Sequence record: NC_023719.1
DNA length: 64,000 bases
Direction: 5' to 3' (one strand)
Position numbers and translations under genes: made by a program. The notes beneath the pieces are model-generated. The model searched no databases, had not been told where the DNA came from, and saw only the letters and a list, made by a program, of their open reading frames with translations. This document shows, piece after piece, positions 42,503 to 61,035 of this stretch (its first letter is position 1; every line of letters starts with the position of its first letter).

Positions 42503-42510
42503 CTTTTTTA
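42482..42510 (+). terminator. Intrinsic terminator before the array
   Basis: AAAGTTACC-ctaaaaa-GGTAACTTT-TTT. Confidence 0.7.
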
Positions 42511-42559: not shown

Positions 42560-43225
42560 ATGGAATTACAACTAAGAGGGTTAAATATACAAGCGCATTC
42601 GCATATAGTAGGAAAAATCGAAGAAATAAAAAAATATTGTGATTCATTCACAGAACAATCTTTTAATGATGCAGGGAAATTAGAAATTAAATTGTTGTTT
42701 AAGAAAAATAGAGATTTTCGACAATTAAACTTGGAATTAATTTCTAAGAGAAAAAAATATTTTCTTCAATCTCTTCAAATAGAAGATGGTAAAATTTATA
42801 ACTCTCTATACTCAGAAAATGGTGAAGCTTTGCAAATTTCTTTAGGTTTAATTAGAGAATTAAGTAAAATTACTGATTTTTTTTATCTTAGTGATCACAA
42901 GTTAGATTTTGACATTGATAAAATTTATTGTAGAGATAATCTTTGTCCATTTTGCGAAAGTAAAATGAATAAGAAAGAGGAGTATTTATCTTATAGCGTA
43001 ACACCAAACATAGAAGTTTACGAGTGTATAAACAATTGTTATAAGCTTTCCAGATCAAAAAATAAAATTGAAATGAGTGGGAATTTTCAAATAATTGGTC
43101 AAAATCATTATGTGGACTTAGATGAATCTATAGAGGAAAGAATTAAGGCGTTAAAAGAAATATCAGAGGAAATTGACTATTGGAGAGAAGGAGATAGATA
43201 TTTAGCAGAAATTTTGAAAAAATAA
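42560..43225 (+). CDS. Array family member 1
   Basis: CRDNLCPFC...CINNCY...YWREGDRYLAEILK. Confidence 0.85.
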   Translation: MELQLRGLNIQAHSHIVGKIEEIKKYCDSFTEQSFNDAGKLEIKLLFKKNRDFRQLNLELISKRKKYFLQSLQIEDGKIYNSLYSENGEALQISLGLIRELSKITDFFYLSDHKLDFDIDKIYCRDNLCPFCESKMNKKEEYLSYSVTPNIEVYECINNCYKLSRSKNKIEMSGNFQIIGQNHYVDLDESIEERIKALKEISEEIDYWREGDRYLAEILKK

Positions 43226-43239
43226 GAGAGGTAAATATC

Positions 43240-43554
43240 TTGATTAATTCAAAAGAATATAATGATTCTATAAGTCGAATAAGAGAAATCTTGGAAATTA
43301 AACAAGTTGAACTATCTCTCGTCACTGGCGTAGAGATAGAAATAAGCGAACTTCCAAAAGTAGATGATTGCATATGTTTCAGAGTAATGAAGAGAAACAA
43401 TTTTTTTCCAAGCATGTTAATGAGAATTGATACTTATATTAAGGGTTCTAAAATATTATATCAATATAGCAATTATAGGAAGTCTTATGAGTATGATTCA
43501 GTAGACTTAGTTATAGAAAAAATAAAGGAGTATCATTTTAAATGCAAAGTTTAA
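43240..43554 (+). CDS. Hypothetical protein (family 3-like), inserted in the array
   Basis: RIREILEIKQVELSLVTGVEIE resembles the 63582 N-terminus. Confidence 0.65.
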   Translation: MINSKEYNDSISRIREILEIKQVELSLVTGVEIEISELPKVDDCICFRVMKRNNFFPSMLMRIDTYIKGSKILYQYSNYRKSYEYDSVDLVIEKIKEYHFKCKV

Positions 43555-43871
43555 CATATTCTAAAAAAATTACAAACAAAATAAAAGATGCATTAGAAAG
43601 TGGAATTGTAGCGAGATTGTTGATAGATAATGAATTGAATTTAAGTTTATACGAAACGGAGAAAATGTCTTCTTTATTCTCATACAGTAAAAATTTCCAT
43701 GTAGAGATAAAGACAAGATTTCAAGTATACGACGTATTAAAAGTTGAAATAGCTTACGACGACGAGAACATTTATATATACCATACTTTGGGTGGAGATA
43801 AGCACAAATACCTTTTTGAATTCGAGTGTATAGACAAGGCGGTAGATCACATAAATTCTTTTTTCAACTAA
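43542..43871 (+). CDS. Hypothetical protein inserted in the array (possibly family 3)
   Basis: Coupled ORF; no Cys4 motif. Confidence 0.65.
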   Translation: MQSLTYSKKITNKIKDALESGIVARLLIDNELNLSLYETEKMSSLFSYSKNFHVEIKTRFQVYDVLKVEIAYDDENIYIYHTLGGDKHKYLFEFECIDKAVDHINSFFN

Positions 43872-43892
43872 AATAAAGGAAGGGTTAATCAG

Positions 43893-44543
43893 ATGAAGGG
43901 AAACTACTGGTACGAATTTGTGAGAGAAAATAAATTTAGTATTGTCGTTAATGACGTTGTTTTAGGACTATTAAATAACATTATTGAGTTTTCAGATAAA
44001 TCTACTATAACTTTAAATAGTGTCAAAGATGTGTTTAGTAAATATGAATTGAATATAGAAAAAGATAATTTCAAGAAGTCAATTTTTTTATTTTGTATTA
44101 ATAATAACTTGGTAAAAGCAAGTAAATATAATGCTTTTACCTCTGATGAATTAAGTGACGCTGTTGATTTCATGTTAGAACGAGATATTAATTATTATTT
44201 TGAAGAAATTTATCAAAATTCTAATGAATGGCAAAAAAATGAAAAAACGATATTTTGTAAAGATAATGTTTGTCCTATTTGTAATTCAAACATTGAAAAA
44301 ATAAGTGGTAAGCCAGTTTTAGTTGGTCACGAATACGTATCTTGTATAAGAGAATGTTACAGTGTCATGAGGCCATTATCAGAACGTGGTTATATCTTCT
44401 TAGACGTTTCTATAAAATTTGAAGGCTCAGGTAGATTTAAATCAATTGGTAGTACCCCTAGAGAAATTGCAAATGCAATTGTTACTTCAATAAATTACTG
44501 GAAAGAAAACGATAGATATTTAGCTGAATTATTAAAAGAATAA
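43893..44543 (+). CDS. Array family member 2
   Basis: CKDNVCPIC...CIRECY...YWKENDRYLAELLK. Confidence 0.85.
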   Translation: MKGNYWYEFVRENKFSIVVNDVVLGLLNNIIEFSDKSTITLNSVKDVFSKYELNIEKDNFKKSIFLFCINNNLVKASKYNAFTSDELSDAVDFMLERDINYYFEEIYQNSNEWQKNEKTIFCKDNVCPICNSNIEKISGKPVLVGHEYVSCIRECYSVMRPLSERGYIFLDVSIKFEGSGRFKSIGSTPREIANAIVTSINYWKENDRYLAELLKE

Positions 44544-44554
44544 TGATAGTAACA

Positions 44555-44584
44555 AAGATGGTGATATTATTTACCATCTTTTTA
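44555..44584 (+). terminator. Intrinsic terminator inside the array
   Basis: AAGATGGT-n10-ACCATCTT-TTT. Confidence 0.65.
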
Positions 44585-44660
44585 TTTTTCAAGACTATTT
44601 TAAATATAATTATCATATAACATAGATTTTACAATTAAATTTAAAAGAGGGTGATAGATA

Positions 44661-45278
44661 ATGTTTAACTTTAAAGGTGTTTATTTTAATTTAACCAAGA
44701 GAGAAGAAAATCATTTAAACGAACTCATCTCATTATCAGAGAACATAATTATAAAAAAAGATGAATCTCTCTGTACGCATAAAAGATATGATATTTACAG
44801 CGTTAGTGTTGTTATTAATAGTAAATGTAATTTTAAATTTAATGTAAAAGTAGATAATTATATCAACAGAATTATATCTTTTAAAGATATAGAAAATAAT
44901 TGCAAATTATCTTACACTGATATTGTAGATGGCGTTTTTTTAATGAAAAATGAAGAATTTAGAAAGAAACTTGATGTACTTAAATGTAAAAATAATATAT
45001 GTCCAATGTGCGGCGCTACGATGATAGAAGAAAGTGTGTTTATTAATATATTTTCTAGGTTAGAATGTTTGAATTCTTGTTATCGTATAACTAATAATAA
45101 TTTATTTTCATCAAATAAAATTTCAATTGGCGCAGTATTACTTAATGATATTTACATTAATGTAGGGGAAAGAGATTTTTCTTTACAGAAAAGAATTGAA
45201 ATAGTAGAAGAATCTTATGAAAAAATACTCTATTGGAAAGAGAACGATAGATATTTAACAAAACTACTGCAAAAATGA
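44661..45278 (+). CDS. Array family member 3
   Basis: CKNNICPMC...CLNSCY...YWKENDRYLTKLL. Confidence 0.85.
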   Translation: MFNFKGVYFNLTKREENHLNELISLSENIIIKKDESLCTHKRYDIYSVSVVINSKCNFKFNVKVDNYINRIISFKDIENNCKLSYTDIVDGVFLMKNEEFRKKLDVLKCKNNICPMCGATMIEESVFINIFSRLECLNSCYRITNNNLFSSNKISIGAVLLNDIYINVGERDFSLQKRIEIVEESYEKILYWKENDRYLTKLLQK

Positions 45279-45320
45279 TTGTCAAAATTATTGTTAATGT
45301 GATATAATAAATATATAAGG
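45279..45320 (+). promoter_or_regulatory. sigmaA-like promoter, conserved phage class
   Basis: TTGTCA (45279-45284), 18 bp spacer, TG-A-TATAAT (45303-45308), AAATATATAAGG. Confidence 0.75.
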
Positions 45321-45327
45321 AGAAATA

Positions 45328-45969
45328 ATGATGTATGATTTTGAAGGTATTGAAATTAATATTACAGAAGATGACAAGAGAGTTTTAATCTTAGAAGAAA
45401 TTAGAGAGTTGTCGTCTAAAATAAAAACAAAACAATCACAAATAAATGCGTATGGAAAATTGTTTCATAACATAACTGTAATAGTATACTTAAAAGATAG
45501 TCAATATTTTGCTTTTCGTTTATGTCTCAATGAATCGATGGAAATATCAAATGTAACAATAACTGAAAACCATGCTCTAATGGTGGGTAAAATAGATCAA
45601 ATGATAAGACTTTCTAAAATTGTAGATATGATGTACGTTTATCAAAATGAAGAAATGAATGAAAAATTAGACATTATAAGATGTCTAAGCGAAAAATGCC
45701 CTATCTGTTCTTCTGAAGTATTGAAGAACCGTTTTGGATTAAATCACGCTCGAAAATGTATTAACGGATGTTACACAACTGAATATCGAGAAAATATAAA
45801 ATTATTAAAAATAGATGTGCAGTTGTTTGATGAAGCAGATGACGTATTCTTTATTAAGCACGGTAAAACAACGTTGCAAGATAGAATAAACATAATTAAT
45901 AATCTTTATAGTGAAATTTTATTTTGGAAAGAAAATGACAGGTATTTAGCTAAAATACTAGTGAAATGA
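45328..45969 (+). CDS. Array family member 4
   Basis: CLSEKCPIC...CINGCY...FWKENDRYLAKIL. Confidence 0.85.
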   Translation: MMYDFEGIEINITEDDKRVLILEEIRELSSKIKTKQSQINAYGKLFHNITVIVYLKDSQYFAFRLCLNESMEISNVTITENHALMVGKIDQMIRLSKIVDMMYVYQNEEMNEKLDIIRCLSEKCPICSSEVLKNRFGLNHARKCINGCYTTEYRENIKLLKIDVQLFDEADDVFFIKHGKTTLQDRINIINNLYSEILFWKENDRYLAKILVK

Positions 45970-45979
45970 GTGGTAAATA

Positions 45980-46594
45980 ATGTATGAATTTGGAGATTTA
46001 AAAATAAATGCTACTAAAGGACAAGTTGAGAAATTGGATGACATTAAGAGTGTTAGTGATTCAATTACTACAAGTTTAGTTTATAGATCTACTGATAAAT
46101 TAGTTTTTTTAGTAAAAGTAGCAAAAAACAATCATAAATACACTTTCTTTATGACTTTAAGGGAAGATGAAATAATGAAGATAAGTTTCGAACAACCTCA
46201 ATATACTGATAAAAAATTATTATTTTCACAACTATCGCATGTAATGTTTGAACATTTAATAATTGTTGCAGATTCGTTATACTTAAGTCAAGATGAACAA
46301 TGCAATGATAAACTAAAAGCTATAATTTGTCAAGATTCTTGTCCTATTTGTGATTCAAAATTGGAAAATAACAATGATTTTTCTGTTACTCTTAAATCAT
46401 GTGCAAATAATTGCTATGAAATAAATAAGAGTTTTAATAAAATGTTATTTCAATTAATGATATTTGATAATCTTTATATTAACAACACAGTCACATCTTT
46501 GCAACAGAGAATAGAGTTTGTAGATAAAGTTTATGATGAAATCTTATATTGGAAAAACGGAGAAAGATATCTTGTAAAATTACTTTCAAAATGA
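45980..46594 (+). CDS. Array family member 5
   Basis: CQDSCPIC...CANNCY...YWKNGERYLVKLL. Confidence 0.85.
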   Translation: MYEFGDLKINATKGQVEKLDDIKSVSDSITTSLVYRSTDKLVFLVKVAKNNHKYTFFMTLREDEIMKISFEQPQYTDKKLLFSQLSHVMFEHLIIVADSLYLSQDEQCNDKLKAIICQDSCPICDSKLENNNDFSVTLKSCANNCYEINKSFNKMLFQLMIFDNLYINNTVTSLQQRIEFVDKVYDEILYWKNGERYLVKLLSK

Positions 46595-46607
46595 AGGAGT
46601 TAATATT

Positions 46608-47261
46608 ATGTATTTATACATTTTTAATGATATTAAAATGAGTGTACGTGAAAATATTGCAAATTTACTTGAAGATCTTTCATATTATGACGTTAAAATA
46701 ATTGGAAGCAGCATAAAAAATCTTACTGAGGTTTACGAAGTGAAAGTTACTAATAAAAGTTGTTCAATTTGTTTTAAAATGCATGTTGACAAACATTCAA
46801 GACAATTCTTTGGATTAACAATTCCTTCCAGTAACTATGAAGAAGATAGTTTACTTTATGGAGCTAAAGAATTGGAATTGATATTTTTAGATTTTATTGA
46901 AAAATTAGATTTAGCTGGAAATAAAGAAATAAATGAAATATTAGATACTATAAAGTGTGAAAATGGATTGTGTCCTATTTGTAAATCCAAAGTAAAAATA
47001 CGGATAACACATAGTCACAATACTTATACCTGTCAAAATGAATGTTATATATTAATAACTCGACCTTTAAAAAGTAATAAAGTTAAATCAATACTTGATG
47101 TAATAATTTTTGGAAGCAGTATTTTTGAAAAAGGTGAAGAAAAACCAGACATAGCAAGAATGCCTATGCATTTGAAAATAAACTTTATAGATAGAATCTA
47201 TAGACAAATTAACTATTGGAAAAACGGAGAAAAATATTTAGCGAAAATACTTTCAAAATAA
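46608..47261 (+). CDS. Array family member 6
   Basis: CENGLCPIC...CQNECY...YWKNGEKYLAKIL. Confidence 0.85.
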   Translation: MYLYIFNDIKMSVRENIANLLEDLSYYDVKIIGSSIKNLTEVYEVKVTNKSCSICFKMHVDKHSRQFFGLTIPSSNYEEDSLLYGAKELELIFLDFIEKLDLAGNKEINEILDTIKCENGLCPICKSKVKIRITHSHNTYTCQNECYILITRPLKSNKVKSILDVIIFGSSIFEKGEEKPDIARMPMHLKINFIDRIYRQINYWKNGEKYLAKILSK

Positions 47262-47275
47262 AAGGGGGATACAAA

Positions 47276-47590
47276 ATGAAAAAAATATATTTTAATGTTA
47301 GCAATGGACAAATAGAAGATCCAAATAATAGTTATTTTCCAAGGTATAAAGCGATGTGCCGTTTTGGGAAAATTAAAGAAATATACACTCTCTTTTCTAT
47401 TGATGCAATATTAGAAAACGGACAAGATTGGGTAGATCATCAAATAAAACATGAGTATAAAGATTGGAAGTATTATTCTAACTTAAGAAAAGAATTACAA
47501 AATTTTATTGCACAACCAAAGTTTTGGTTTAAAAGAACAAACTACAAAGAAGGATTAACTAATAAATTTGTATGGATTAAAATTTATTAA
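47276..47590 (+). CDS. Unrelated hypothetical protein inserted in the array
   Basis: ATG after AAAGGGGG; no Cys4 motif. Confidence 0.65.
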   Translation: MKKIYFNVSNGQIEDPNNSYFPRYKAMCRFGKIKEIYTLFSIDAILENGQDWVDHQIKHEYKDWKYYSNLRKELQNFIAQPKFWFKRTNYKEGLTNKFVWIKIY

Positions 47591-47606
47591 AAAGGGTGCG
47601 TTTTAA

Positions 47607-48275
47607 ATGTATAATAAAAAAGAAATAATTTTTTGTGGCGAGTTACTGTTATGTAGTAATGAGATTGAAATAAAATTAAAAGAAATATCAAAAGTTTGTG
47701 ATTTAATGGAGATTAAAGAGTATAGGGCAGAACAGTACAGTGGTATGAACATATTGGCAGTATTTATAGCTGTTACGAAAAAAGATTTTACAGAAAATTT
47801 TATAATGCGTTATCATAAAAAAACTAAAACTATAATAAGCATACAGAGAACTCAAATTGGATTTGAGCAACCTTTCGAAAGACAAACAATAACTAGGCAA
47901 AATAAAGAATTAACAAGTATAATAGACAGAATGCTTATACATGGTGATGAACAAATTAAGAAAAAAATAGAACTCTTCTGGTTTAAGGATGGGTGTCCTA
48001 TTTGCAAATCAAAAGAAATAAAAATCATTGAGGAAGATTATTTTGGTGTAATTGTAAATTGCCAAAATGGATGTTTTCATTTAGACTCATCGAGCTCAGA
48101 GGAATCTATTGATTTTTTAATAAAGTTTTTTGATGAATCACCCTTTTTTTCATTATCTCTAAACTCATCTTTGGACGAGAAGTTAGAAACTATTAATAAA
48201 ATTTATGAAAAAATTAATTATTGGAAAGAAAATGATAGATATTTATTAAGAATGTTAACTAACAAAGGAGAGTAA
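47607..48275 (+). CDS. Array family member 7
   Basis: GCPIC...CQNGCF...YWKENDRYLLRML. Confidence 0.85.
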   Translation: MYNKKEIIFCGELLLCSNEIEIKLKEISKVCDLMEIKEYRAEQYSGMNILAVFIAVTKKDFTENFIMRYHKKTKTIISIQRTQIGFEQPFERQTITRQNKELTSIIDRMLIHGDEQIKKKIELFWFKDGCPICKSKEIKIIEEDYFGVIVNCQNGCFHLDSSSSEESIDFLIKFFDESPFFSLSLNSSLDEKLETINKIYEKINYWKENDRYLLRMLTNKGE

Positions 48276-48279
48276 AGAA

Positions 48280-48951
48280 ATGATTTACGAAAACGTATAT
48301 AAACTTGATTGGTTGGAATTTGGTGCCTCAGTAGATGAGATAGAAAAATTCAATGATATTGTTAGCGTTAGTGATACTATAAAAGTTAAAAAAGTTGAGC
48401 GAAATAGTGAACTAAGATTTTATCTAGTTGAAGCTTCAAATATAGAAAAAACTATAGAATTTGTAATAAAGATATCAGAAAATAACGTAATAGTTAGTAT
48501 AGATGACACTAAACCATTTGATTATGATGAGAAGATTCGCCATTTTGATAGTACAATTATAGCGGTATTGTCAAATATCGCAGACTCTTTATTTTTAGCT
48601 AAAAATAAAGAAATAAAAAAGAAAATTGATATAATTCATTGCATCGATAATCTGTGTCCTATTTGCGGAAATGAGATAAAAAAAGGTATAGAAAAAGAAA
48701 TGTTGAATAGATTTGATTCATTAACATGTAAGAACGGATGTTATGTAGTAGACTTTCGTAATTTTAATTTCGAACATCAAAGTACAGTTGTATCTGTGAC
48801 ATTTTTCCGAAAAAATAAAATTAGTTCAAAATTATTAAGTTCTTTAAGTCGAAGAATGATAACAATAGATCAAATATATGCTAGTATTCAATGGTGGAAA
48901 AGTAATGATAGATACTTAGCAAAAATACTAACAGAAAGTGATGGTAAATAA
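48280..48951 (+). CDS. Array family member 8
   Basis: CIDNLCPIC...CKNGCY...WWKSNDRYLAKIL. Confidence 0.85.
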   Translation: MIYENVYKLDWLEFGASVDEIEKFNDIVSVSDTIKVKKVERNSELRFYLVEASNIEKTIEFVIKISENNVIVSIDDTKPFDYDEKIRHFDSTIIAVLSNIADSLFLAKNKEIKKKIDIIHCIDNLCPICGNEIKKGIEKEMLNRFDSLTCKNGCYVVDFRNFNFEHQSTVVSVTFFRKNKISSKLLSSLSRRMITIDQIYASIQWWKSNDRYLAKILTESDGK

Positions 48952-49612
48952 AATGAGTCATAATGAGGAATTTATATATGAAAATTTTAAAATGCATATG
49001 CCTAAAGGAAGAAAAGAAGAATTAATAAACATTATTGAATTAAGTGACGCTGTTTCAATTGAAAAAAAGCATTATACTCTTGATGATTCACCTGGAAAAA
49101 CAAAAGCATGTTATAGGTTCACAGTAACAAAAAGTGGTGGTGAATTTAAATTTGACATATATGCGGATGATTTATCTCATTATCACCAATCAATTTTGAT
49201 TGAAGAAGCTCGAGACGATGTATTTAAGTTTTATCAATTAGAGTTACAACATATATTAGACTTCATTTATATTTCAAGCAATAACGAATTAAAGAGAAAA
49301 ATTGAGGTCATAAGATGTAAAAATGAAAAGTGTCCTATTTGTGATTCAAAGGTAGATATTGACGATAGAGCGTTTAATGGGAATAATGCTTCATTAAGAT
49401 GTAGTAATGGTTGCTATGTCGTACGCGGCGTCATGGAATCATTAAATAGTTTTTATTTTAATGTAATAATATTTAAAGACGAATCTAGCTATTATAAGTC
49501 TAATGTGGCATTGGAAGAAAAGATAAAAAGAGTTAATGCGATTTATGATAAAATAGAGTATTGGAAAGAGAATGATAAGTACTTAATAAAAATACTTAAA
49601 GAGGATGATTGA
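48938..49612 (+). CDS. Array family member 9
   Basis: CKNEKCPIC...CSNGCY...YWKENDKYLIKIL. Confidence 0.85.
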   Translation: MMVNKMSHNEEFIYENFKMHMPKGRKEELINIIELSDAVSIEKKHYTLDDSPGKTKACYRFTVTKSGGEFKFDIYADDLSHYHQSILIEEARDDVFKFYQLELQHILDFIYISSNNELKRKIEVIRCKNEKCPICDSKVDIDDRAFNGNNASLRCSNGCYVVRGVMESLNSFYFNVIIFKDESSYYKSNVALEEKIKRVNAIYDKIEYWKENDKYLIKILKEDD

Positions 49613-50204
49613 TATGGTAGATATTATCAACTTTGGCGGTATACCCATAAAAGCTGATAGGCAAATGTACAACAAGTTAAGTGATATCTTAGAAAATTGC
49701 GATAGCATTCATACCGAGTTAGAATATCAAAGTTCGTTTGTTACAAGTTATAAAGTAATTATTATAAAAAACAATCAATCAATTGAATTTAATATTTCAA
49801 TGAAACAAGATATGAGCCTATTTATTATTAAAATAAATGACCATGAAAAACATAGATTTAAGATAATGACTATATTATCTATAATATCTAATAAATTATT
49901 ATTTATGAATGATGAAAAAATGATAGGTAAGCTAAAAATAATCTGTTGCAAGCAAGAAAGTAGATGTCCAATTTGTAATTCCGAGTTAAGCAAAAGCATG
50001 TTGAAAGAATGCGTTAATGGCTGTTATTATTTAATGATATATGACAAAACAGTTTTTTATGCGACTGTATTTAATGAAACATTTGATATTTCTGGTGATG
50101 AGTCTACAATTGAAGAAAAAATTAATACAATAAACAAGCTTTACGATAAAATTAATTATTGGAAAGAGAATGATAAATACTTAACGAATATTCTTTCGAA
50201 TTAG
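49605..50204 (+). CDS. Array family member 10
   Basis: RCPIC...CVNGCY...YWKENDKYLTNIL. Confidence 0.85.
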   Translation: MIDMVDIINFGGIPIKADRQMYNKLSDILENCDSIHTELEYQSSFVTSYKVIIIKNNQSIEFNISMKQDMSLFIIKINDHEKHRFKIMTILSIISNKLLFMNDEKMIGKLKIICCKQESRCPICNSELSKSMLKECVNGCYYLMIYDKTVFYATVFNETFDISGDESTIEEKINTINKLYDKINYWKENDKYLTNILSN

Positions 50205-50208
50205 AGAG

Positions 50209-50811: not shown

Positions 50812-50817
50812 TGAAAA

Positions 50818-51459: not shown

Positions 51460-51470
51460 GAGAGATAACT

Positions 51471-53945: not shown

Positions 53946-53948
53946 TGA

Positions 53949-54587
53949 ATGATTAAATTTCAAAATTTAGAATTTAAAGTTGATTTTCCCGAAGAAGAGA
54001 GATATCTGAAAGAAATCGAAGAGATGTGTGATTCCATAGAAATAGAAGAAACGCATCATAAGAATTGGTCTTTTGCTTATAACTTTAACAATGCAACAGA
54101 GTATAGAGTAAAAGTTACAAAAGGGAGCTTAGTAATTAAATTTTATCTATTTATCAAAAAGAAACAACTACACGCTACAAGATTTTTCAATTTTTCCACA
54201 GAATATAATAAGCATAATCAATTCATCTTTGTTTTAAAATGCCTTAGACACTTAGAAAACAAAGAGATACAAGAACACTTAGATACAATAATTTGTAAAG
54301 ATAATATTTGCCCAATATGTGAATCAGAATTAAAAATAGATGAATTTAGAAGTCTAATGGGTAAAGAATGTGCTAACAAATGTTATTTTGTTTCTTTAGA
54401 TAGAAATAGTATCTTCCCAACTGGCTTCGGTACATTTGATGAAAATGCTATATTAGACAATTCAGATGAGAGTGTAGAAAAAATAATTAGAAACATGTAT
54501 AGAATTCGGAAGTCAATAAACTACTGGAGAGAAAACGATAGATATTTAGCTAAAATACTCAAAGGAAGAAGTAATGAAGATGATTAA
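53949..54587 (+). CDS. Array family member 17
   Basis: CKDNICPIC...CANKCY...YWRENDRYLAKIL. Confidence 0.85.
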   Translation: MIKFQNLEFKVDFPEEERYLKEIEEMCDSIEIEETHHKNWSFAYNFNNATEYRVKVTKGSLVIKFYLFIKKKQLHATRFFNFSTEYNKHNQFIFVLKCLRHLENKEIQEHLDTIICKDNICPICESELKIDEFRSLMGKECANKCYFVSLDRNSIFPTGFGTFDENAILDNSDESVEKIIRNMYRIRKSINYWRENDRYLAKILKGRSNEDD

Positions 54588-55194
54588 TTTTGCAGGGTTA
54601 GATTTAAAACTTAAATCAGATAAAGATGAATCACTCCTACAACGAATACAAAAAGAAAGTGAAGAGATCATCGTTTATCAATCTTTAGGTCTTTTCGATT
54701 TTTGTATCAAATTAATAGCAAATAATAAATCTATACGATTTAATATTTCTTTAAGTTCAGATGGTAATGTATTTAAAATATATTATAGTGATTACTCCGA
54801 TCATACAAATACGCAAAATTTAACTTATATACTAGAAGATTTAATTGTGATAAGTAATGCAGAGCTCAGTAGAAAAGTAGATATAATAAGGTGTACAAAT
54901 GAAATTTGCCCAATTTGTCAGTCTAAATTAGAAAGACGTTATGGTAATATCTACAACTTAGCTTGTCATAACGGATGTTATGATATAGCTATGCATTCAA
55001 AGATAAAATTAAACTTTGGTGTTTCATTCTTTCATGAAAAAAGTTATCAGTTATATGGAGCTTTGCGAAATATAGATAATGCTATATATTCTACAGATGA
55101 AAAGTTTGAAACAGTGTATAAGATTTATGATGAAATAAACTATTGGAAAGAAAATGATAGATACTTAATGAAGATTATAAAAGGAGAGGCTTAA
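54574..55194 (+). CDS. Array family member 18
   Basis: CTNEICPIC...CHNGCY...YWKENDRYLMKII. Confidence 0.85.
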   Translation: MKMINFAGLDLKLKSDKDESLLQRIQKESEEIIVYQSLGLFDFCIKLIANNKSIRFNISLSSDGNVFKIYYSDYSDHTNTQNLTYILEDLIVISNAELSRKVDIIRCTNEICPICQSKLERRYGNIYNLACHNGCYDIAMHSKIKLNFGVSFFHEKSYQLYGALRNIDNAIYSTDEKFETVYKIYDEINYWKENDRYLMKIIKGEA

Positions 55195-55758
55195 ATGTCT
55201 AACTTTAACTTCGCAGGGGAGTCAAAAGTGTTAATGGAAGAATTAGAAGACATCAGTGATAAAATGAAAGTTACTAAAACTGATGATTACTCATATGTAA
55301 TAGAAGCTAATAGAGGAGAATCAAGTGTAATATTTAAAATTATAACAGATGATTCTAGTATTATGTTTGGAATAGAGTATAAAAGTTATTTCTCACAAAG
55401 AATAGGTACTATAATAAATATCATGGAAGATTTATGTTTAAGTGGAGATAAAGATTTACAGCATAAATTTGACACTATTCAATGTGAAAATAATAAATGC
55501 CCTGTGTGTAACTCGGAAATGATTTTAAATTTTATGGAACAATCGTGTAGTAATAAATGTTACTCAATTTCACCTTTATTTGGAAAATATACTATTCAAT
55601 TTGATGCAAAATTATTTACTGATCAACCATTTGAAATATACCCTTATATGAAAATGAAAGATAAAATAAAAGTTATTAACGAGTTATATGATTCAATCAA
55701 TTACTGGAAGGAAGATGATAAATACTTAATAAAAATACTTTCAAAAGGAGATGCATAG
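55195..55758 (+). CDS. Array family member 19
   Basis: CENNKCPVC...CSNKCY...YWKEDDKYLIKIL. Confidence 0.85.
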   Translation: MSNFNFAGESKVLMEELEDISDKMKVTKTDDYSYVIEANRGESSVIFKIITDDSSIMFGIEYKSYFSQRIGTIINIMEDLCLSGDKDLQHKFDTIQCENNKCPVCNSEMILNFMEQSCSNKCYSISPLFGKYTIQFDAKLFTDQPFEIYPYMKMKDKIKVINELYDSINYWKEDDKYLIKILSKGDA

Positions 55759-56325
55759 ATGATTAATATAATACTTAATAATAGAGAAAAAGAGAAGATT
55801 AGAGAACTTGAAGAAATAAGCGATACAATGAAAACAATACAAATTGGAAAAAACGAATATGAAGTAAAAGTTGTAAAAAACAAAACTACTATTACCTTTA
55901 CTATCGTGACAGATATAATGACTAATGGAATAACAGAAATTGTTTACAAAAATCTATCTGAATTCAAGCTTAGAAATTTAGTTTGTGTTATAGAAGATCT
56001 TTATTTACCCAATGATAAAAACTTACAAGAAAAACTACATATTATTTATTGTGTAGATGACGTTTGTCCTATATGCGGTATGAAGTTAAAGCAAATATAT
56101 TCTGATAAAAAAGAATGTAAAAATAAATGTTACGAAGTACTTATTGTAAGAAATGGATGTAAGATAAATTTTCTTGTTAAAATCTTCAAAACTCAAGAAT
56201 ACGAAGTTTATCCGACAAGGGCTTTAAAAGAAAAAATAGAAATCGTTAATCAAATATGTTATCAAATAAATTTTTGGAAAAATAATGATAGATACTTAAT
56301 GAGACTGATAGAAGGAGAAAACTAA
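55759..56325 (+). CDS. Array family member 20
   Basis: CVDDVCPIC...CKNKCY...FWKNNDRYLMRLI. Confidence 0.85.
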   Translation: MINIILNNREKEKIRELEEISDTMKTIQIGKNEYEVKVVKNKTTITFTIVTDIMTNGITEIVYKNLSEFKLRNLVCVIEDLYLPNDKNLQEKLHIIYCVDDVCPICGMKLKQIYSDKKECKNKCYEVLIVRNGCKINFLVKIFKTQEYEVYPTRALKEKIEIVNQICYQINFWKNNDRYLMRLIEGEN

Positions 56326-56327
56326 AT

Positions 56328-56900
56328 ATGTTGCTTGATATAAAACTTCGTGTATCAGAAATTGAATCAGTAAAAGAACTAATAGCAATTAGTGATCAAA
56401 TTAACATCTCTAAAGAAGAAAAAAATTTGTATAAAATGATAGCAACAAGAGGAAAAAATACTATAAAAGTTACAATTGAAACAAATGAGAATAAAATGAT
56501 TTATTCAATGAAAAATGAGCAGCCATATGCAGAAAAAATACATGATATAGAGGAAATAGTTGAGTATTTATACGTAAACGACAATCAAGAATTACAGAGT
56601 AAGTTAGATGCTATATTGTGTAAAAACAATCTATGTCCAATATGCAATTCAGAACTAGAATTAGACATATATGCTGTTGCCGAAGTAATAAGCTGCAAAA
56701 ATAAATGCTATTCGGTAATAGATCTAACGGGAAGATTTAAACTATATTTTCATGTAGTTATATTTGGAGAAAACATCTCTGCCTCTCCACATGATAAAAT
56801 ACTTAACAAGGTCGATACGGTTAATCAATTATATGACAAGATAAATCTCTGGAAAGATAACGATAACTACTTAACAAAAATGTTAATGGAGGGTAACTAG
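56328..56900 (+). CDS. Array family member 21
   Basis: CKNNLCPIC...CKNKCY...LWKDNDNYLTKML. Confidence 0.85.
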   Translation: MLLDIKLRVSEIESVKELIAISDQINISKEEKNLYKMIATRGKNTIKVTIETNENKMIYSMKNEQPYAEKIHDIEEIVEYLYVNDNQELQSKLDAILCKNNLCPICNSELELDIYAVAEVISCKNKCYSVIDLTGRFKLYFHVVIFGENISASPHDKILNKVDTVNQLYDKINLWKDNDNYLTKMLMEGN

Positions 56901-57448
56901 TGTTCATAGAAGCTGGTAGTAGAATAAAAGCAACGATGCAAAAAATCATAGACATTAGTGACGACATGGAAATATCTGTTGAAACGGGTGAAATATACAA
57001 AATAAGAGTTACAAAAGGTAAGGCTGTCATTGACTTCAAAGCTTTAGTGAATAAAGATAATGAATTAAAAGATATACGTTATAAGTTTCCATTTAATAGA
57101 CTAAAAAATTTAGAAACTATCATAGAAGACTTGTACTTACAAGATGATAAAGAACTAAGTAATAAACTAGAAAAAATCTATTGTTCAAATAACATATGCC
57201 CTATATGTAATTCAAAACTAGAAAGAACTCGTGTAAGAGCAAATTGTGAAAACGGTTGCTATTCTTTATCTCCACATGATTATCTCAAATTTCACTTTAC
57301 TCTTTGGGTATTTGATAACAAATATGATGTTTGTCCAGATTTAAGCTTAGAAACTAAAACAATCACTATTAATGAAATATGTAGTCAAATAGACTACTGG
57401 AAAGAAAATGATAATTACTTAGCAGAAATAATAAAAGGGGAAAATTAA
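56900..57448 (+). CDS. Array family member 22
   Basis: CSNNICPIC...CENGCY...YWKENDNYLAEII. Confidence 0.85.
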   Translation: MFIEAGSRIKATMQKIIDISDDMEISVETGEIYKIRVTKGKAVIDFKALVNKDNELKDIRYKFPFNRLKNLETIIEDLYLQDDKELSNKLEKIYCSNNICPICNSKLERTRVRANCENGCYSLSPHDYLKFHFTLWVFDNKYDVCPDLSLETKTITINEICSQIDYWKENDNYLAEIIKGEN

Positions 57449-57449
57449 C

Positions 57450-57995
57450 ATGTTTGTAGAAGCTGTAGGTAATGATAAAGAAAAACTGCAAGAAATTATA
57501 GACATCAGCGATAAAATAGAAGTCTCTAAAGACGATGAAACATATATAGTAAAAGCTACTAAAGGTGACACACTCATTAAATTTGCAATCACGGCAGATG
57601 AAAATAATAAATTAAAAAGAGTACACTATAAAATACCATTTACATTTAATAAACACACAAATTTAGCAAATATCATAGAAGACTTATATTTACCAAATGA
57701 TAAAGATTTACAAGATAAACTACAAGTAATCTATGGCGTAAATAGAATATGCCCTATATGTAATTCACAATTAGAAAAAAACTATAGATTAGAATGTGAA
57801 AACAACTGCTATTCGTTTTTATCAATCAATAGTCTCAAACTATACTTTAATATCAAAATATTTGACACTAAATACAGAGTAGATCAAACATCCAGCTTAG
57901 ACGATAAAATAAATACTATCAATGAAATATACAACCAATTAAACTATTGGAAAGAAGATGACAGATACTTAACAGAATTCATCAAACGAAACTAA
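57450..57995 (+). CDS. Array family member 23
   Basis: ICPIC...CENNCY...YWKEDDRYLTEFI. Confidence 0.85.
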   Translation: MFVEAVGNDKEKLQEIIDISDKIEVSKDDETYIVKATKGDTLIKFAITADENNKLKRVHYKIPFTFNKHTNLANIIEDLYLPNDKDLQDKLQVIYGVNRICPICNSQLEKNYRLECENNCYSFLSINSLKLYFNIKIFDTKYRVDQTSSLDDKINTINEIYNQLNYWKEDDRYLTEFIKRN

Positions 57996-57996
57996 T

Positions 57997-58037
57997 TTTA
58001 CAAAAATTGCATATTTTGATATAATTAATATATAAGG
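57997..58037 (+). promoter_or_regulatory. sigmaA-like promoter, conserved phage class
   Basis: TTTACA (57997-58002), 17 bp spacer, TG-A-TATAAT (58020-58025), TAATATATAAGG. Confidence 0.8.
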
Positions 58038-58053
58038 AGAGGAGAAAATAACT

Positions 58054-58650
58054 ATGCCTATTATTAGAATTAAACAATATGAAATCATTACTAATTCACA
58101 TAAAGAAACAGAAAGACTTAAAGAAATCATAGGATTAAGCAAAAAGAACTTCACTATAGTAAAAGATAAACTAACATATAACATAAGAATTAAACTAAAA
58201 AAATCATTCTTACAATTCACAATCAAAACAAACAGTGAAAATGTAATTACTAAAATATCCTATAGTAACGGAAAATCAAATCGTTCAGTAAATAAAATAC
58301 TGCACGTATTAAACAATATCATAGAAGATATTAACTTAGTTACTAATGAAGGTCTAAGGGATAAACTAGAACTTATAAGATGTCATGATAATCTTTGTCC
58401 TATTTGTAGTTCTCCACTAGAAAAAATAAGCAGCTTTGAAAGACATTGCAAAAATGATTGCTATAGTATCTGGTATTCAACAAAATATCATGAAATAGAA
58501 GTATCTGTAACAATATTTGAAAAGAAACTAAAAGCATTTGGATCAAACTCGATGAAAACAAAAATCAACACTATAAACGCTATATGTAATCAAATCTTTT
58601 ACTGGAAACAAAGCGATAATTATCTTGCAAAACTTATATTGCAAGATTAA
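58054..58650 (+). CDS. Array family member 24
   Basis: CHDNLCPIC...CKNDCY...YWKQSDNYLAKLI. Confidence 0.85.
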   Translation: MPIIRIKQYEIITNSHKETERLKEIIGLSKKNFTIVKDKLTYNIRIKLKKSFLQFTIKTNSENVITKISYSNGKSNRSVNKILHVLNNIIEDINLVTNEGLRDKLELIRCHDNLCPICSSPLEKISSFERHCKNDCYSIWYSTKYHEIEVSVTIFEKKLKAFGSNSMKTKINTINAICNQIFYWKQSDNYLAKLILQD

Positions 58651-58667
58651 GAAAGGAGAAAACTATT

Positions 58668-59261
58668 ATGTTAACTACTAGAATTAAACAATTTGAATTC
58701 AATACTACTCCTACCGAAGACATGAAGCTATTTGACATCCTTAGTATAAGTGATAACGTATCTATTACTAAAGACGGCTTAGTTTATCATGTCACTTCTC
58801 AAAAAGATGATACTACTGTAGAATTTTCAATAGTAACAAATACAAAAAACTACATTATTAACATCATATATGATAAACAAAAACCTCTTTTTTTATCAAA
58901 TCAAATTTTAGTACCTCTAATTAACATAGCGGAAGACTATGCTTTAGACACTAATAAAGAACTACAAGAAAAACTAACAACTATTTTATGTAAAGATAAT
59001 TTTTGTCCAATATGTAACTCTCAACTCATAGAAGGAAAAAGACACGAATTAAAATGTAATAACAACTGTTATAGTATAAGCTATTCAAATTACACCCGTA
59101 CTATAGATCTAGAAGCAACTATCTTTAATGAAGAATTCCAAGCATACGGAGATCAATCAATAAAAGATAAAATAGAAGCTATAAATCTTATATATGAACA
59201 AATCTCACACTGGAAAGAAAACGATAAATACTTAACAAAAATACTAAAAGGAGAAAACTAA
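58668..59261 (+). CDS. Array family member 25
   Basis: CKDNFCPIC...CNNNCY...HWKENDKYLTKIL. Confidence 0.85.
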   Translation: MLTTRIKQFEFNTTPTEDMKLFDILSISDNVSITKDGLVYHVTSQKDDTTVEFSIVTNTKNYIINIIYDKQKPLFLSNQILVPLINIAEDYALDTNKELQEKLTTILCKDNFCPICNSQLIEGKRHELKCNNNCYSISYSNYTRTIDLEATIFNEEFQAYGDQSIKDKIEAINLIYEQISHWKENDKYLTKILKGEN

Positions 59262-59262
59262 T

Positions 59263-59856
59263 ATGGACGTTATCGAAATTAAACAATTTGAGATAAATAC
59301 TTCACAAGAAGAATACAAAATACTTAGTGATATCCTTAATATAAGCAATAATTTTTCTATTACAAAAGAAAATTCAACTTACTATATTACATCTCAAAAA
59401 GAAAACGCTTGCATAAAATTTTCACTAGTAATAAATCAATATAATCATATAGCTAAAGTTGTATATAACGAAGGAAAACAAAAATACAACATACATGCAA
59501 TAGCAAGAACCCTAACTGACATAGCAGAAGATTACACTATAGCTACTAATAAAAAAATAAAACATAAACTATCAATAATAAAATCTGAAAATAATAAATG
59601 CCCTATTTGTAATTCTCAACTAACAATGCTATCAGAAAGTGAATTAAAATGTAAAAACAACTGCTACAACATATTCAATTCAAACTACAGCGGGTCAATT
59701 GACTTTGTAGTAACAATCTTTGGTAAAGAGCACTCAATATATGGAGACTATTCAATAAAATCTAAAGTAAGACTCATCAACAAAATTTATAATCATATCT
59801 CCAACTGGAAAAAGAACGAAAAGTATCTAGCAAAAATACTAAAAGGAGAATACTAA
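59263..59856 (+). CDS. Array family member 26
   Basis: KCPIC...CKNNCY...NWKKNEKYLAKIL. Confidence 0.85.
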   Translation: MDVIEIKQFEINTSQEEYKILSDILNISNNFSITKENSTYYITSQKENACIKFSLVINQYNHIAKVVYNEGKQKYNIHAIARTLTDIAEDYTIATNKKIKHKLSIIKSENNKCPICNSQLTMLSESELKCKNNCYNIFNSNYSGSIDFVVTIFGKEHSIYGDYSIKSKVRLINKIYNHISNWKKNEKYLAKILKGEY

Positions 59857-59857
59857 T

Positions 59858-60448
59858 ATGCTCTCTATCAAAATTAAACAATTTGAAATAAACACTACTC
59901 CAAAAGAATATGATCTACTTAGAGATATCATTAAAGCAAGTGATAAAATATCTATCACAAAAGAAAATCTAACTTACTATGTCACATCTCAAAAAGATGA
60001 AACAATTATAGAATTCTCAATCATAATAAATCCAAGAAACGATATTATCAACATCCTCTATGATAAAAAGAAATCTCCCTTCCCAATATATAAAGTCGTG
60101 CGAGCTCTAACAAACATAACAGAAGATCTCCATCTAGAAACTAATAAAAAATTATACAATAAACTAAAAATCATACAATGCGAAGATCACAAATGCCCTA
60201 TATGCGGATCTGAACTCTTAATATTACAAAATGAATCAAAATGCAAAAATAAATGTTATAGCGTACACTACTCAACATCTAGCTACGCTATAGATTTAGA
60301 AGTAAACATCTTTAATGAAGAATTCACAGCATACGGAAATCAATCAATAGAAAACAAAATAGATACTATAAATCTTATCTGTAATCAAATCTCTTACTGG
60401 AAAGAAGATGACAAATACTTAACGAAAATACTAAAAGGAGAATACTAA
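59858..60448 (+). CDS. Array family member 27
   Basis: CEDHKCPIC...CKNKCY...YWKEDDKYLTKIL. Confidence 0.85.
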   Translation: MLSIKIKQFEINTTPKEYDLLRDIIKASDKISITKENLTYYVTSQKDETIIEFSIIINPRNDIINILYDKKKSPFPIYKVVRALTNITEDLHLETNKKLYNKLKIIQCEDHKCPICGSELLILQNESKCKNKCYSVHYSTSSYAIDLEVNIFNEEFTAYGNQSIENKIDTINLICNQISYWKEDDKYLTKILKGEY

Positions 60449-60449
60449 C

Positions 60450-61001
60450 ATGCTCAATATAAAAACTACAAAAGAAGAACAAGAAAAACTACAAGAAATA
60501 ACAAACATCTGTGATAAAATAGAAACAACTAAAATCTCAAGCGACAAATACAAAATAAAAGCTACAAAAGGAAACATCACTATAAACTTCTCAATTGTGA
60601 CAAATCAAGATAACGGAATAAGATTCGTCAATTATAAATCACCCTTCAACAAACTAAAAAATCTACAACAAATCATAGAAGATCTATATATACCCAACGA
60701 TAAAAAACTACAAAATCAACTAACCACTATATATAGCGAAAACAATCTTTGCCCTATATGTAACTCAAAACTAAATACTCCCTCAACTAAAATAAAAAAA
60801 TGCAACAATAAATGCTATTTGCTTTTCTTAACTTCACGAGACGAACACAAAATACATTTCAATATTAGAATATTCGATGATTTCTTTAAAATTCAGGAAG
60901 ATCAAAACTTATATAAAAAAATAAACATCATAAACACTATATATAATCAAATCTCTCACTGGAAAGAAAACGAAAATTATATAGCAAAACTACTAAAATA
61001 A
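60450..61001 (+). CDS. Array family member 28
   Basis: LCPIC...CNNKCY...HWKENENYIAKLL. Confidence 0.85.
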   Translation: MLNIKTTKEEQEKLQEITNICDKIETTKISSDKYKIKATKGNITINFSIVTNQDNGIRFVNYKSPFNKLKNLQQIIEDLYIPNDKKLQNQLTTIYSENNLCPICNSKLNTPSTKIKKCNNKCYLLFLTSRDEHKIHFNIRIFDDFFKIQEDQNLYKKINIINTIYNQISHWKENENYIAKLLK

Positions 61002-61006
61002 AACAC

Positions 61007-61035
61007 AAACTATCTTATAATAAGGTAGTTTTTTT
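61007..61035 (+). terminator. Intrinsic terminator closing the array
   Basis: AAACTATCTTA-taa-TAAGGTAGTTT-TTTT. Confidence 0.7.

What the first reader, a model, noticed from the sequence alone, without database searches (positions are those of the whole stretch)
42560..61001. 18.4-kb tandem array of 28 paralogs with a variable N-terminal half and a constant Cys4 + YWKExDxYLxKIL half: candidate new modular effector/adaptor system
28 co-oriented genes of 181-224 aa share L[YF]Lxx[DN]KE[LI]xxKLxxIxC, invariant CPxC and CxxxC, an (I/V)F strand, KIxxINxIY and the terminal [YFHW]W[KR]E[ND]D[RK]YLxK[IL]L. N-terminal ~100 aa are very divergent yet keep a common pattern (LxEIxx[IM]SD/CDxI...Y.V...K....I.F) (seen). 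All frames look intact despite deep divergence, which implies selection on every copy. I recognise no named family. A constant Zn-binding docking domain plus a diversified specificity domain resembles adaptor repertoires such as poxvirus ANK/F-box proteins. Candidates are a library of anti-defence or host-takeover proteins that recruit one host machine (e.g. a Clp protease or RNA polymerase) to many targets, or a gene accordion under host arms-race selection (inference).
Basis: partly seen in the sequence, partly recalled or inferred. Interest (0 to 1): 0.9.

Follow-up and report, generated by a model that had tools for sequence, protein, structure and literature searches.

The report
Phage G zinc-ribbon paralog array
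The window is part of the giant Bacillus phage G, and the finding is a real run of 28 related zinc-ribbon genes of unknown function, an expansion already noted in the literature, which seems to be an old, stable gene family and not a newly found adaptor system.

Summary
Window 42560-61001 holds 28 co-oriented, intact paralogs, gp444, gp447-451 and gp453-474 of Bacillus phage G (window = NC_023719.1 310001-374000).

It is not new. Iyer et al. [quoted passage not shown] Their exemplar, gp32, is the stand-alone C-terminal module of this family. Buchan et al. 2025 (PMC12484599) call the surrounding 35 kb a "cryptic zone".

What I add:
- Phage G has 36 genes with the module: 28 long forms, all in this array, plus 8 others.
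- The roughly 95-aa Zn-ribbon-plus-helix module is an autonomous unit. It is amplified to 17-21 copies per 20 kb in uncultured G-like phages and was not found in cellular genomes.
- The long form probably arose once, by adding an alpha/beta N-domain, and then expanded in tandem. Tandem long forms also occur on two metagenomic contigs.
- The "constant" half averages only 34% identity, against 22% for the N-half.
- dN/dS is below 1 in both halves.
- The closest pair is 58% identical, so this is not a recent accordion.
- AlphaFold models are confident, but they have no neighbours among solved structures.
- Sigma-A-like promoters precede two blocks of the array.

My best guess, with low confidence, is a set of non-enzymatic binding proteins expressed early in infection.

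The parts
42560..61001 (+). The whole tandem array: 28 long-form Zn-ribbon paralogs plus 3 unrelated inserted genes (phage G gp444-gp474)
42560..43225 (+). gp444, long form (221 aa), the most divergent member
43240..43554 (+). gp445 (104 aa), not a family member, inserted in the array
43542..43871 (+). gp446 (109 aa), not a family member
43893..44543 (+). gp447, long form
44661..45278 (+). gp448, long form
45331..45969 (+). gp449, long form; first gene after a conserved promoter-like element
45980..46594 (+). gp450, long form
46608..47261 (+). gp451, long form
47276..47590 (+). gp452 (104 aa), not a family member (phrog_13574, unknown function)
47607..48275 (+). gp453, long form
48280..48951 (+). 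gp454, long form
48953..49612 (+). gp455, long form
49614..50204 (+). gp456, long form
50218..50811 (+). gp457, long form
50818..51459 (+). gp458, long form
51471..52082 (+). gp459, long form
52082..52687 (+). gp460, long form
52693..53319 (+). gp461, long form
53316..53945 (+). gp462, long form
53949..54587 (+). gp463, long form
54580..55194 (+). gp464, long form
55195..55758 (+). gp465, long form (187 aa); the copy modelled with AlphaFold2 (pLDDT 93, pTM 0.88)
55759..56325 (+). gp466, long form
56328..56900 (+). gp467, long form
56900..57448 (+). gp468, long form
57450..57995 (+). gp469, long form
58054..58650 (+). gp470, long form; first gene after the second conserved promoter-like element
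58668..59261 (+). gp471, long form; with gp473 the closest pair (58% aa, 72% nt)
59263..59856 (+). gp472, long form
59858..60448 (+). gp473, long form
60450..61001 (+). gp474, long form, last gene of the array
1446..1760 (+). gp410, a stand-alone short form (C-module only, 104 aa) elsewhere in the window; modelled with AlphaFold2 (pLDDT 85)
42479..42509 (+). Terminator-like hairpin plus T run just upstream of gp444
44554..44581 (+). Terminator-like hairpin plus T run between gp447 and gp448
45272..45323 (+). Conserved promoter-like element (-35-like hexamer, extended -10 TGATATAAT, conserved leader and RBS) before gp449
   Evidence: (family D17)
57989..58040 (+). Second copy of the same promoter-like element, before gp470
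61010..61036 (+). AT-rich hairpin followed by seven T right after the gp474 stop. Read by eye; the terminator scan did not call it because the stem has too few G-C pairs
   Evidence: sequence; not listed

Best explanation
The array is the long-form branch of a multigene family that is specific to phage G and its uncultured relatives.

Shown: the family's core is an autonomous module of about 95 aa. It has a four-cysteine zinc ribbon, a small beta-sheet and a long C-terminal helix that ends in a conserved aromatic-W-K-E-N-D-R-Y-L stretch.

Inferred from the best-hit pattern: in one lineage this module gained an N-terminal alpha/beta domain (helix, four strands, two helices). The resulting gene of about 200 aa then multiplied by tandem duplication to 28 copies. 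Those copies have since diverged deeply while each stayed intact.

Inferred function:
- No invariant His/Asp/Glu set suggests catalysis, so I read the proteins as non-enzymatic binders.
- The Zn knuckles, one helix and the terminal helix would form a fixed scaffold.
- The variable loops and sheet surfaces would give each copy its own target, a protein or a nucleic acid.
- Most copies follow promoters of host sigma-A type, so they are probably made early, as regulators or host-takeover factors, and not as virion parts.
For: Identity and census:
- The window is 100% identical to phage G.
- Phage G has 36 module-bearing genes, and the 28 with the N-domain are all in the array.
- This agrees with the roughly 35 ZnR copies of Iyer et al., whose exemplar is gp32.

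Autonomy of the module:
- An exhaustive HMM search gave 362 representatives, mostly stand-alone proteins of 85-125 aa.
- G-like contigs carry 17-21 copies per 20 kb.

Single origin plus tandem growth:
- The C-modules of long forms are nearest to other long forms in 26 of 28 cases, while phage G short forms are nearest to metagenomic short forms.
- Identity falls with distance along the array (Spearman -0.23, p 7e-6), and the closest pairs are neighbours.
- Tandem long forms also occur on the metagenomic contigs L010 and L011.

Selection:
- All 28 frames are open, against P about 1.5e-9 per gene by chance. dN/dS is below 1 in both halves.

Fold:
- AlphaFold2 gives pLDDT 93 and pTM 0.88 for gp465 and pLDDT 85 for gp410.

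Scaffold with variable surfaces:
- Conservation is limited to the knuckles, helix 86-95 and the last helix. Loops vary in length by up to 13 residues.

Not uniformly DNA-binding:
- pI ranges from 4.7 to 9.7 and net charge from about -9 to +21.

Promoters:
- A conserved TTTACA / 17 nt / TGATATAAT element lies before gp449 and gp470.
- It recurs 25 times in the genome, mostly ahead of small genes at 355-470 kb.
Against: - No partner, ligand or expression datum exists for any member, so the function is inferred from anatomy alone.
- The conserved C-terminal stretch may be purely structural: a Trp packing on the ribbon and an Asn/Asp helix cap. In that case it is not a shared docking surface.
- The temporal class of the promoter element is unknown. 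One copy precedes a gene annotated as endolysin.
- The first block, gp444-448, has no such promoter.
- Short forms cluster beside the major capsid gene in phage G and in relatives. That position would fit late or virion proteins.
- Foldseek finds nothing significant for either domain, so the fold gives no functional lead.
- dS is near saturation (0.6-2.4), so the dN/dS values are rough.
- The promoter scan as a whole is not above chance (148 found against 147 expected).
Confidence: 0.4

Rival explanations
1. The proteins are DNA-binding. They act either as a large set of sequence-specific transcription factors or as structural DNA-packaging proteins, with the zinc ribbon contacting nucleic acid. 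This is the suggestion of Iyer et al. 2021.
For: - The proposal is published.
- Zinc ribbons often bind nucleic acids (established knowledge).
- There are weak sub-threshold matches to Zn_ribbon_TFIIB, YacG and Lar-type ribbons in some short forms.
- The weak Foldseek neighbours of the N-domain have nucleic-acid-binding topologies: dsRBD-like Acb4, PUR-alpha and R2D2.
- gp206 joins the module to a different N-terminal part.
- Phage G depends on host RNA polymerase plus its own sigma factors.
Against: - Charge is not consistently basic. About half of the copies are acidic, with pI 4.7-6.3.
- No helix-turn-helix or other DNA-reading domain was detected.
- All the ribbon matches are below the curated cut-offs.
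- No repeated operator-like sites were sought or found.
Confidence: 0.2
2. The proteins are an anti-defence or host-takeover repertoire in the reader's sense. The conserved C-module docks onto one common machine, for example ClpXP or RNA polymerase, and the variable parts bring in or block many different targets.
For: - The architecture is modular: the C-module occurs alone and with different N-parts.
- The strongest conservation is on a charged helical stretch, which could be a surface.
- Promoters are of early type.
- The family is phage-only.
- Phage G encodes its own ClpP and ClpX, both detected in particles (PMC12484599).
- The top Foldseek hit of the full model is the SPO1 anti-CBASS sponge Acb4.
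Against: - Short forms lack any second domain, so a two-surface adaptor is not required by the family.
- Pairwise dN/dS is below 1 in both halves, and there are no recent duplicates.
- The Acb4 similarity is not significant (E 0.07, TM 0.2-0.4). It is absent at sequence level, with no PF13876 match.
- There are no matches in PADLOC or to known anti-defence families.
Confidence: 0.2
3. The proteins are virion components, for example internal head or DNA-associated proteins packaged in many variants, in the way paralogous inner-body or internal proteins occur in other large phages.
For: - In phage G and in three related contigs the short forms lie directly downstream of the major capsid gene.
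- The array follows a block of giant adhesin or fibre-like genes and an XkdX-family gene.
- 104 proteins, many of them non-structural, were detected in particles (PMC12484599).
Against: - Neither paper's main text names any member among the detected virion proteins. The supplementary table could not be read.
- Sigma-A-like promoters precede two blocks of the array.
- Charge varies widely.
- There is no similarity to known structural proteins.
Confidence: 0.12

Closest known systems
The phage G zinc-ribbon lineage-specific expansion of Iyer, Anantharaman, Krishnan, Burroughs and Aravind 2021 (Viruses 13:63, PMC7824862; exemplar YP_009015343.1 = gp32)
   Same: It is the same family. gp32 is a stand-alone copy of the C-module and matches the C-half profile at E 1.6e-14. 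My census of 36 genes fits their '~35 copies'.
   Different: The paper gives the family one sentence. It does not mention the main-text architecture: a 28-gene tandem array, a family-specific N-domain, amplification of the short form in relatives, or the structure models. Its functional suggestion (transcription factors or structural DNA binders) is untested and only weakly favoured here. I could not read its supplement.
PHROGs families phrog_4661 (long form, 205 positions) and phrog_13559 (short form, 107 positions), both 'unknown function'
   Same: Long forms match phrog_4661 over their full length at E 1e-43 to 1e-57, and match phrog_13559 with the C-half. Metagenomic short forms match both.
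   Different: These are clustering products with no annotation. They add no function.
The 'cryptic zone' of phage G in Buchan et al. 2025 (npj Viruses 3:71, PMC12484599)
   Same: [quoted passage not shown] Their methylation calls fall in gp465, gp467, gp472 and gp473.
   Different: They do not describe the ORFs as one paralogous zinc-ribbon family, and they state that the role of the zone is not known.
Poxvirus ankyrin/F-box (PRANC) adaptor repertoires
   Same: A multigene viral family with a short conserved C-terminal element and more variable remaining parts.
   Different: No ankyrin, F-box or PRANC domains were found. The conserved part is a zinc ribbon that also works alone. No cullin-type partner exists in bacteria. 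This is an analogy only.
Bacillus phage SPO1 Acb4 (anti-CBASS sponge, PDB 9e4w) and the dsRBD-like alpha-beta-beta-beta-alpha topology
   Same: It is the best Foldseek match of the full-length model. The match probably involves the N-domain, because the C-module alone scores Acb4 only at E 4.7. The Acb4 paper describes a helix, three-strand, helix core.
   Different: E is 0.07-0.3 and TM 0.2-0.4, which is not significant. The N-domain has four strands. There is no sequence match to the Acb4 family. Oligomer and ligand pocket were not testable.

Membership tests
Phage G ZnR expansion (Iyer et al. 2021) / phrog_4661 and phrog_13559 | Four-cysteine zinc-ribbon signature (CPxC ... CxxxC) | tested here: met
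   Invariant in 28 of 28 long forms and in all 40 sequences of alignment A6, which includes short forms.
Phage G ZnR expansion (Iyer et al. 2021) / phrog_4661 and phrog_13559 | Significant sequence similarity to the published exemplar gp32 and to the PHROG profiles | tested here: met
   gp32 matches the C-half HMM at E 1.6e-14. phrog_4661 matches at E 1e-43 to 1e-57 and phrog_13559 at E 1e-10 to 1e-16.
Phage G ZnR expansion (Iyer et al. 2021) / phrog_4661 and phrog_13559 | Actual zinc binding | not testable with these tools
   Inferred only from the Cys pattern and the ribbon-like AlphaFold2 model.
Poxvirus-type ANK/F-box (PRANC) adaptors | Ankyrin repeats plus a C-terminal F-box-like element | tested here: not met
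   No such Pfam families at E up to 1 in nine members or in the 28 N-halves.
Acb4 anti-CBASS sponge family (PF13876) | Sequence membership in the family | tested here: not met
   No PF13876 match. The PDB profile search with the N-half does not return 9e4w.
Acb4 anti-CBASS sponge family (PF13876) | Shared fold | tested here: inconclusive
   Foldseek E 0.07-0.3, probability 0.4-0.8, TM 0.20-0.41.
Acb4 anti-CBASS sponge family (PF13876) | Tetramer with nucleotide-binding pockets | not testable with these tools
   Only single-chain prediction is available.
Zinc-ribbon transcription factors (TFIIB/TFIIE/TFIIS-type ribbons) | Match to a curated ribbon family above its cut-off | tested here: not met
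   The best match is Zn_ribbon_TFIIB at 18.6 bits against a cut-off of 22, in one short form (gp166 = P0038). The others have none.
Gene accordion (recent arms-race amplification) | Near-identical tandem copies | tested here: not met
   The closest pair is 72% identical in nucleotides and 58% in residues. No repeat copy exceeds 84% identity to its reference over 100 nt.
Gene accordion (recent arms-race amplification) | Copy-number differences between isolates | not tested
   Only one phage G sequence is in the collections. Buchan et al. report five laboratory variants as 99.9% identical but do not comment on this array.
Known anti-phage-defence or counter-defence protein families | Match to PADLOC models | tested here: not met
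   Only chance-level hits, E 0.0008-0.015 on short stretches.

The most novel reading that the evidence does not exclude
The module is a phage-invented, zinc-stabilised binding scaffold. It would be a repertoire of small 'binders' whose variable loops and, in the long forms, an added alpha/beta domain each recognise a different host or phage macromolecule. G-like megaphages would then carry dozens of ready-made specific inhibitors or regulators that are switched on early by host RNA polymerase. Both domains would be new folds with no solved relative.
Probability: 0.2. Interest if true: 0.75.

Novelty: already known. Interest (0 to 1): 0.42.

Why it matters
This is the largest paralog family of the only cultured megaphage. 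It fills about 4% of the genome and most of a region that the latest phage G study calls cryptic.

Three results turn an unexplained block of hypothetical ORFs into a defined target for structural and expression work:
- the block is one zinc-ribbon family;
- the unit is an autonomous module of about 95 aa shared by a clade of uncultured giant phages;
- the long form is a single domain accretion followed by an old tandem expansion.

If the members prove to be specific binders, the family would be a new protein scaffold and a guide to what very large phages spend their extra coding capacity on.

Tried and rejected
Searches that found nothing useful:
- Pfam, NCBIfam, PADLOC and PDB sequence searches with single members and with profiles of the full length, the N-half and the C-half gave only chance-level zinc-knuckle hits: RING fingers, S27ae, LysW, McsA, YacG, Lar.
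- Foldseek with the full-length model against PDB gave a best E of 0.07. Against the viral library BFVD it returned only phage G paralogs.
- Foldseek with the C-module model against PDB gave a best E of 1.4.
- The word-indexed protein search returned almost only phage G itself. The exhaustive HMM search was needed to see the family.
A smaller alignment worked.
- The GTDB species genomes gave 63 pattern matches, none confirmed.
- I could not read the supplements of either paper, so I do not know whether members were detected in particles.

Ideas tested and rejected:
- The N-domain is a degenerate duplicate of the C-module: hhalign probability 0.2-1.3%.
- gp445 plus gp446, which together are the length of one member, are a decayed copy: no similarity.
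- Other paralog runs flank the array: BLAST links only gp478-480 and gp492/494.
- Membrane or secreted proteins: no hydrophobic stretch in any member.
- A zinc-binding anti-sigma factor of the CsfB/Gin or ZAS kind came to mind. No such family was returned by the Pfam scans, so I do not claim it.

Method note: the public phage G record was read in eleven separate pieces and each piece was scanned on its own.

Full report
**Identity of the window.** A megablast of window 42000-62000 against the phage collection gives a 100% match over the full length to Bacillus phage G (JN638751.1 / NC_023719.1, 497,513 bp), so window coordinate + 310000 = record coordinate. The record annotates the region only as gp444 to gp474, with no product names. 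Upstream lie giant proteins gp420-431 with weak BNR and glucodextranase-B matches and an XkdX-family gene, which together look like an adhesin or fibre block. A 1.6-kb stretch without ORFs follows the array.

- Twenty-eight + strand genes of 181-224 aa fill 42560-61001.
- In their alignment the four Cys of CPxC and CxxxC, the Pro and one Tyr are invariant, and five more columns are at least 90% conserved.
- With the local composition (43% A, 31% T) a codon is a stop with probability 0.097, so a 200-codon frame stays open by chance with P about 1.5e-9. All 28 are open.
- Three small genes inside the array (gp445, gp446, gp452) are unrelated to it.

**How variable and how constant.** Mean pairwise identity is 27.9% overall, 21.7% for the N-halves and 34.3% for the C-halves. 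Mapped on the predicted secondary structure of gp465, conservation sits in four short islands. The mean share of the commonest residue is:
- 0.96 for knuckle 1 and 0.71 for knuckle 2;
- 0.55 for the helix at 86-95;
- 0.72 for the last 14 residues of the C-terminal helix;
- 0.19-0.39 for the ribbon strands, the loops and the beta-hairpin of the C-half, the same range as the N-half.

Length varies by up to 13 residues in single loops. The picture is a fixed scaffold with variable surfaces, not a variable half joined to a constant half.

**The finding is in the literature.**
- Iyer et al. [quoted passage not shown]
- That accession is gp32. Its 117 residues are a stand-alone copy of the C-half, with both knuckles and the terminal motif.
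- PHROGs holds the long form as phrog_4661 and the short form as phrog_13559, both of unknown function.
- Buchan et al. 2025 describe a 35-kb "cryptic zone" of 66 hypothetical ORFs. By their gene numbers it covers this array, and they place methylation calls in gp465, 467, 472 and 473. They do not note the paralogy and state that the role of the zone is unknown.

**Census.** I read the public record in eleven separate pieces and scanned each on its own with profiles of the C-half (A2, A4) and the N-half (A3).
- Thirty-six genes carry the C-module: the 28 array genes; seven short forms of 92-118 aa (gp32, 34, 35, 37, 46, 166, 410); and gp206, where the module ends a 203-aa protein with an unrelated N-part.
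- Only the 28 array genes have the N-domain.
- One short form, gp410, lies in this window at 1446-1760.

**Distribution outside phage G.**
- An exhaustive HMM search of 1.84 billion representatives finds 362 proteins at E <= 0.001. The 28 best are phage G. About seven others are full-length relatives, and nearly all the rest are stand-alone modules of 85-125 aa.
- Their contigs look like phage G. A 163-kb "Bacillales bacterium" MAG contig, 75-kb and 61-kb SRA contigs, two IMG/VR contigs and a 476-kb metagenome contig carry 17-21 short forms per 20 kb. Where the flank is visible, these lie next to the major capsid gene, as gp30-37 do in phage G.
- Two short SRA contigs carry at least four tandem long forms each, so the tandem long-form arrangement is not unique to phage G.
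- A motif scan of one genome for each of 185,579 bacterial and archaeal species gave no confirmed relative.
- As far as these searches see, the family belongs to a small clade of very large phages.

**History of the array.**
- The C-modules of long forms find other long forms as best hits in 26 of 28 cases, and metagenomic long forms do likewise. Each phage G short form is closer to a metagenomic short form than to any phage G paralog.
- This fits old, orthologous short forms and a single origin of the long form by addition of the N-domain.
- The N-domain is not a detectable duplicate of the C-module.
- Identity declines with distance along the array (Spearman -0.23, p 7e-6). The closest pairs are neighbours at the 3' end: gp471/473 at 58%, gp472/473 at 51%, gp468/469 at 49%. 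That is expected for tandem duplication.
- Even these pairs are only 61-72% identical in nucleotides, and no repeat copy exceeds 84% identity to its reference over 100 nt. The expansion is therefore old, not an active accordion.

**Selection.** For the six closest pairs, Nei-Gojobori dN/dS is 0.36-0.59 in the N-half and 0.19-0.46 in the C-half. With dS at 0.6-2.4 these values are approximate. Both halves are under purifying selection on average, the N-half less strictly. Positive selection at single sites cannot be excluded without orthologous arrays.

**Structure.**
- AlphaFold2 on gp465 with the 28 paralogs as alignment gives mean pLDDT 93 and pTM 0.88. The order of elements is helix, four strands, two helices, the ribbon, two more strands and a 30-residue helix.
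- I infer from the high pTM that the two halves pack as one body. No error map was available to check this.
- The short form gp410 folds on its own at pLDDT 85 and pTM 0.72.
- Foldseek finds no significant neighbour in the PDB. The best match for the full model is SPO1 Acb4 at E 0.07, then PUR-alpha, R2D2 and the RnlA N-domain. The best for the C-module alone is E 1.4.
- In the viral structure library only phage G paralogs match.
- Acb4 is described as a dsRBD-like helix, three-strand, helix protein, so the weak hits reflect a common alpha/beta topology of the N-domain and nothing more.

**Chemistry.**
- There is no invariant His, Asp or Glu constellation.
- pI runs from 4.7 to 9.7 and net charge from about -9 to +21.
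- No member has a membrane-like segment.
- This argues for soluble, non-enzymatic proteins and against a uniform role as basic DNA-coating proteins.

**Transcription signals.**
- Most genes abut or overlap, so they must be read in blocks.
- Terminator-like hairpins lie before gp444 and after gp447. By eye there is another after gp474.
- In the gaps before gp449, gp470 and gp475 sits a 52-nt element present in three copies (family D17). Its 20-nt core is found three times exactly in the window, against 0.03 expected.
- Across the phage G pieces, 25 copies share TTTACA or a near variant, a 17-nt spacer, TGATATAAT and a conserved leader. Twenty-one of them lie between 355 and 470 kb, mostly ahead of small unknown genes.
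- The hexamers fit the host sigma-A pattern with an extended -10. In Bacillus phages that pattern usually marks early genes; this rests on established knowledge and is not shown for phage G. One copy precedes a gene annotated as endolysin, so the temporal class stays open.

**Weighing the explanations.**
- I favour non-enzymatic binders on a zinc scaffold, probably made early, at confidence 0.4. This reading uses all the anatomy: an autonomous module, variable loops, purifying selection on each copy, varied charge, and the promoters.
- The published DNA-binding idea (0.2) is not excluded, but the many acidic members do not favour it.
It is not needed for the short forms and has no support from selection or fold.
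- A virion role (0.12) is suggested by the position of the short forms beside the capsid gene. Existing particle proteomes could check it.

**Verdict.** The feature is real and striking but already reported, and its function remains unknown. Its value lies in the sharper description given here and in the descriptive tests it makes possible.

Noticed in passing
window 45272-45323, 57989-58040, 62574-62625; 25 copies in the phage G record (for example L013:2280-2299, 29423-29442, 41835-41854, 48307-48326; L017:6869-6888): A highly conserved promoter-like element: an A-rich stretch, TTTACA, a 17-nt spacer, TGATATAAT, then AAATATATAA and a ribosome-binding site. Twenty-one of the 25 copies lie between 355 and 470 kb of the genome, mostly before small unknown genes. 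It is probably one temporal class of phage G promoters.
   Followed up: partly
window 61002-62645: A 1.6-kb ORF-free, very A-rich gap after the array. It has at least eight copies of a palindromic TCTATATATAGA-type motif, a perfect 25-nt inverted repeat (62231-62255 / 62291-62315) and a 26-nt one (61987-62012 / 62045-62070). No Rfam family reaches threshold. It could be a regulatory or replication-related region.
   Followed up: partly
window 43240-43871 and 47276-47590: Three unrelated small genes (gp445, gp446, gp452) are embedded in the array. gp452 belongs to phrog_13574. None has a Pfam match.
   Followed up: yes
L009:40842-41453 (phage G gp206); L005:2711-3838 and L025:2780-3922 (metagenomic relatives): The C-module also ends longer proteins with other N-terminal parts: gp206 (203 aa) and a 375-381 aa protein next to a ROS/MucR-like zinc-finger gene downstream of the capsid gene. 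Another representative, P0110, has a membrane-like N-terminus and a second ribbon.
   Followed up: partly
window 58000-62000: GC skew turns negative and AT skew rises to 0.25-0.33 over the last five array genes and the gap behind them. The rest of the window has positive GC skew. These five genes are also the youngest subfamily.
   Followed up: no
L013:19-5020 (phage G gp485-gp495) and window 62646-64000 (gp475-478): Further runs of co-oriented small genes of similar size follow the array: about 100 aa for gp475-484 and about 140-158 aa for gp485-495. BLAST links only gp478-480 and gp492/494, so any wider paralogy would need profile methods.
   Followed up: partly
L014:37784-39744 (phage G gp257, gp258): Phage G encodes its own ClpP-like and ClpX-like proteins. 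Buchan et al. report both in the particle proteome.
   Followed up: no
window 6783-37675: Six very large genes (1021-2010 aa; gp420, 424-427, 431) with weak BNR-repeat and glucodextranase-B-domain matches precede the region. Buchan et al. call gp424 an adhesion protein family found only in phage G.
   Followed up: no
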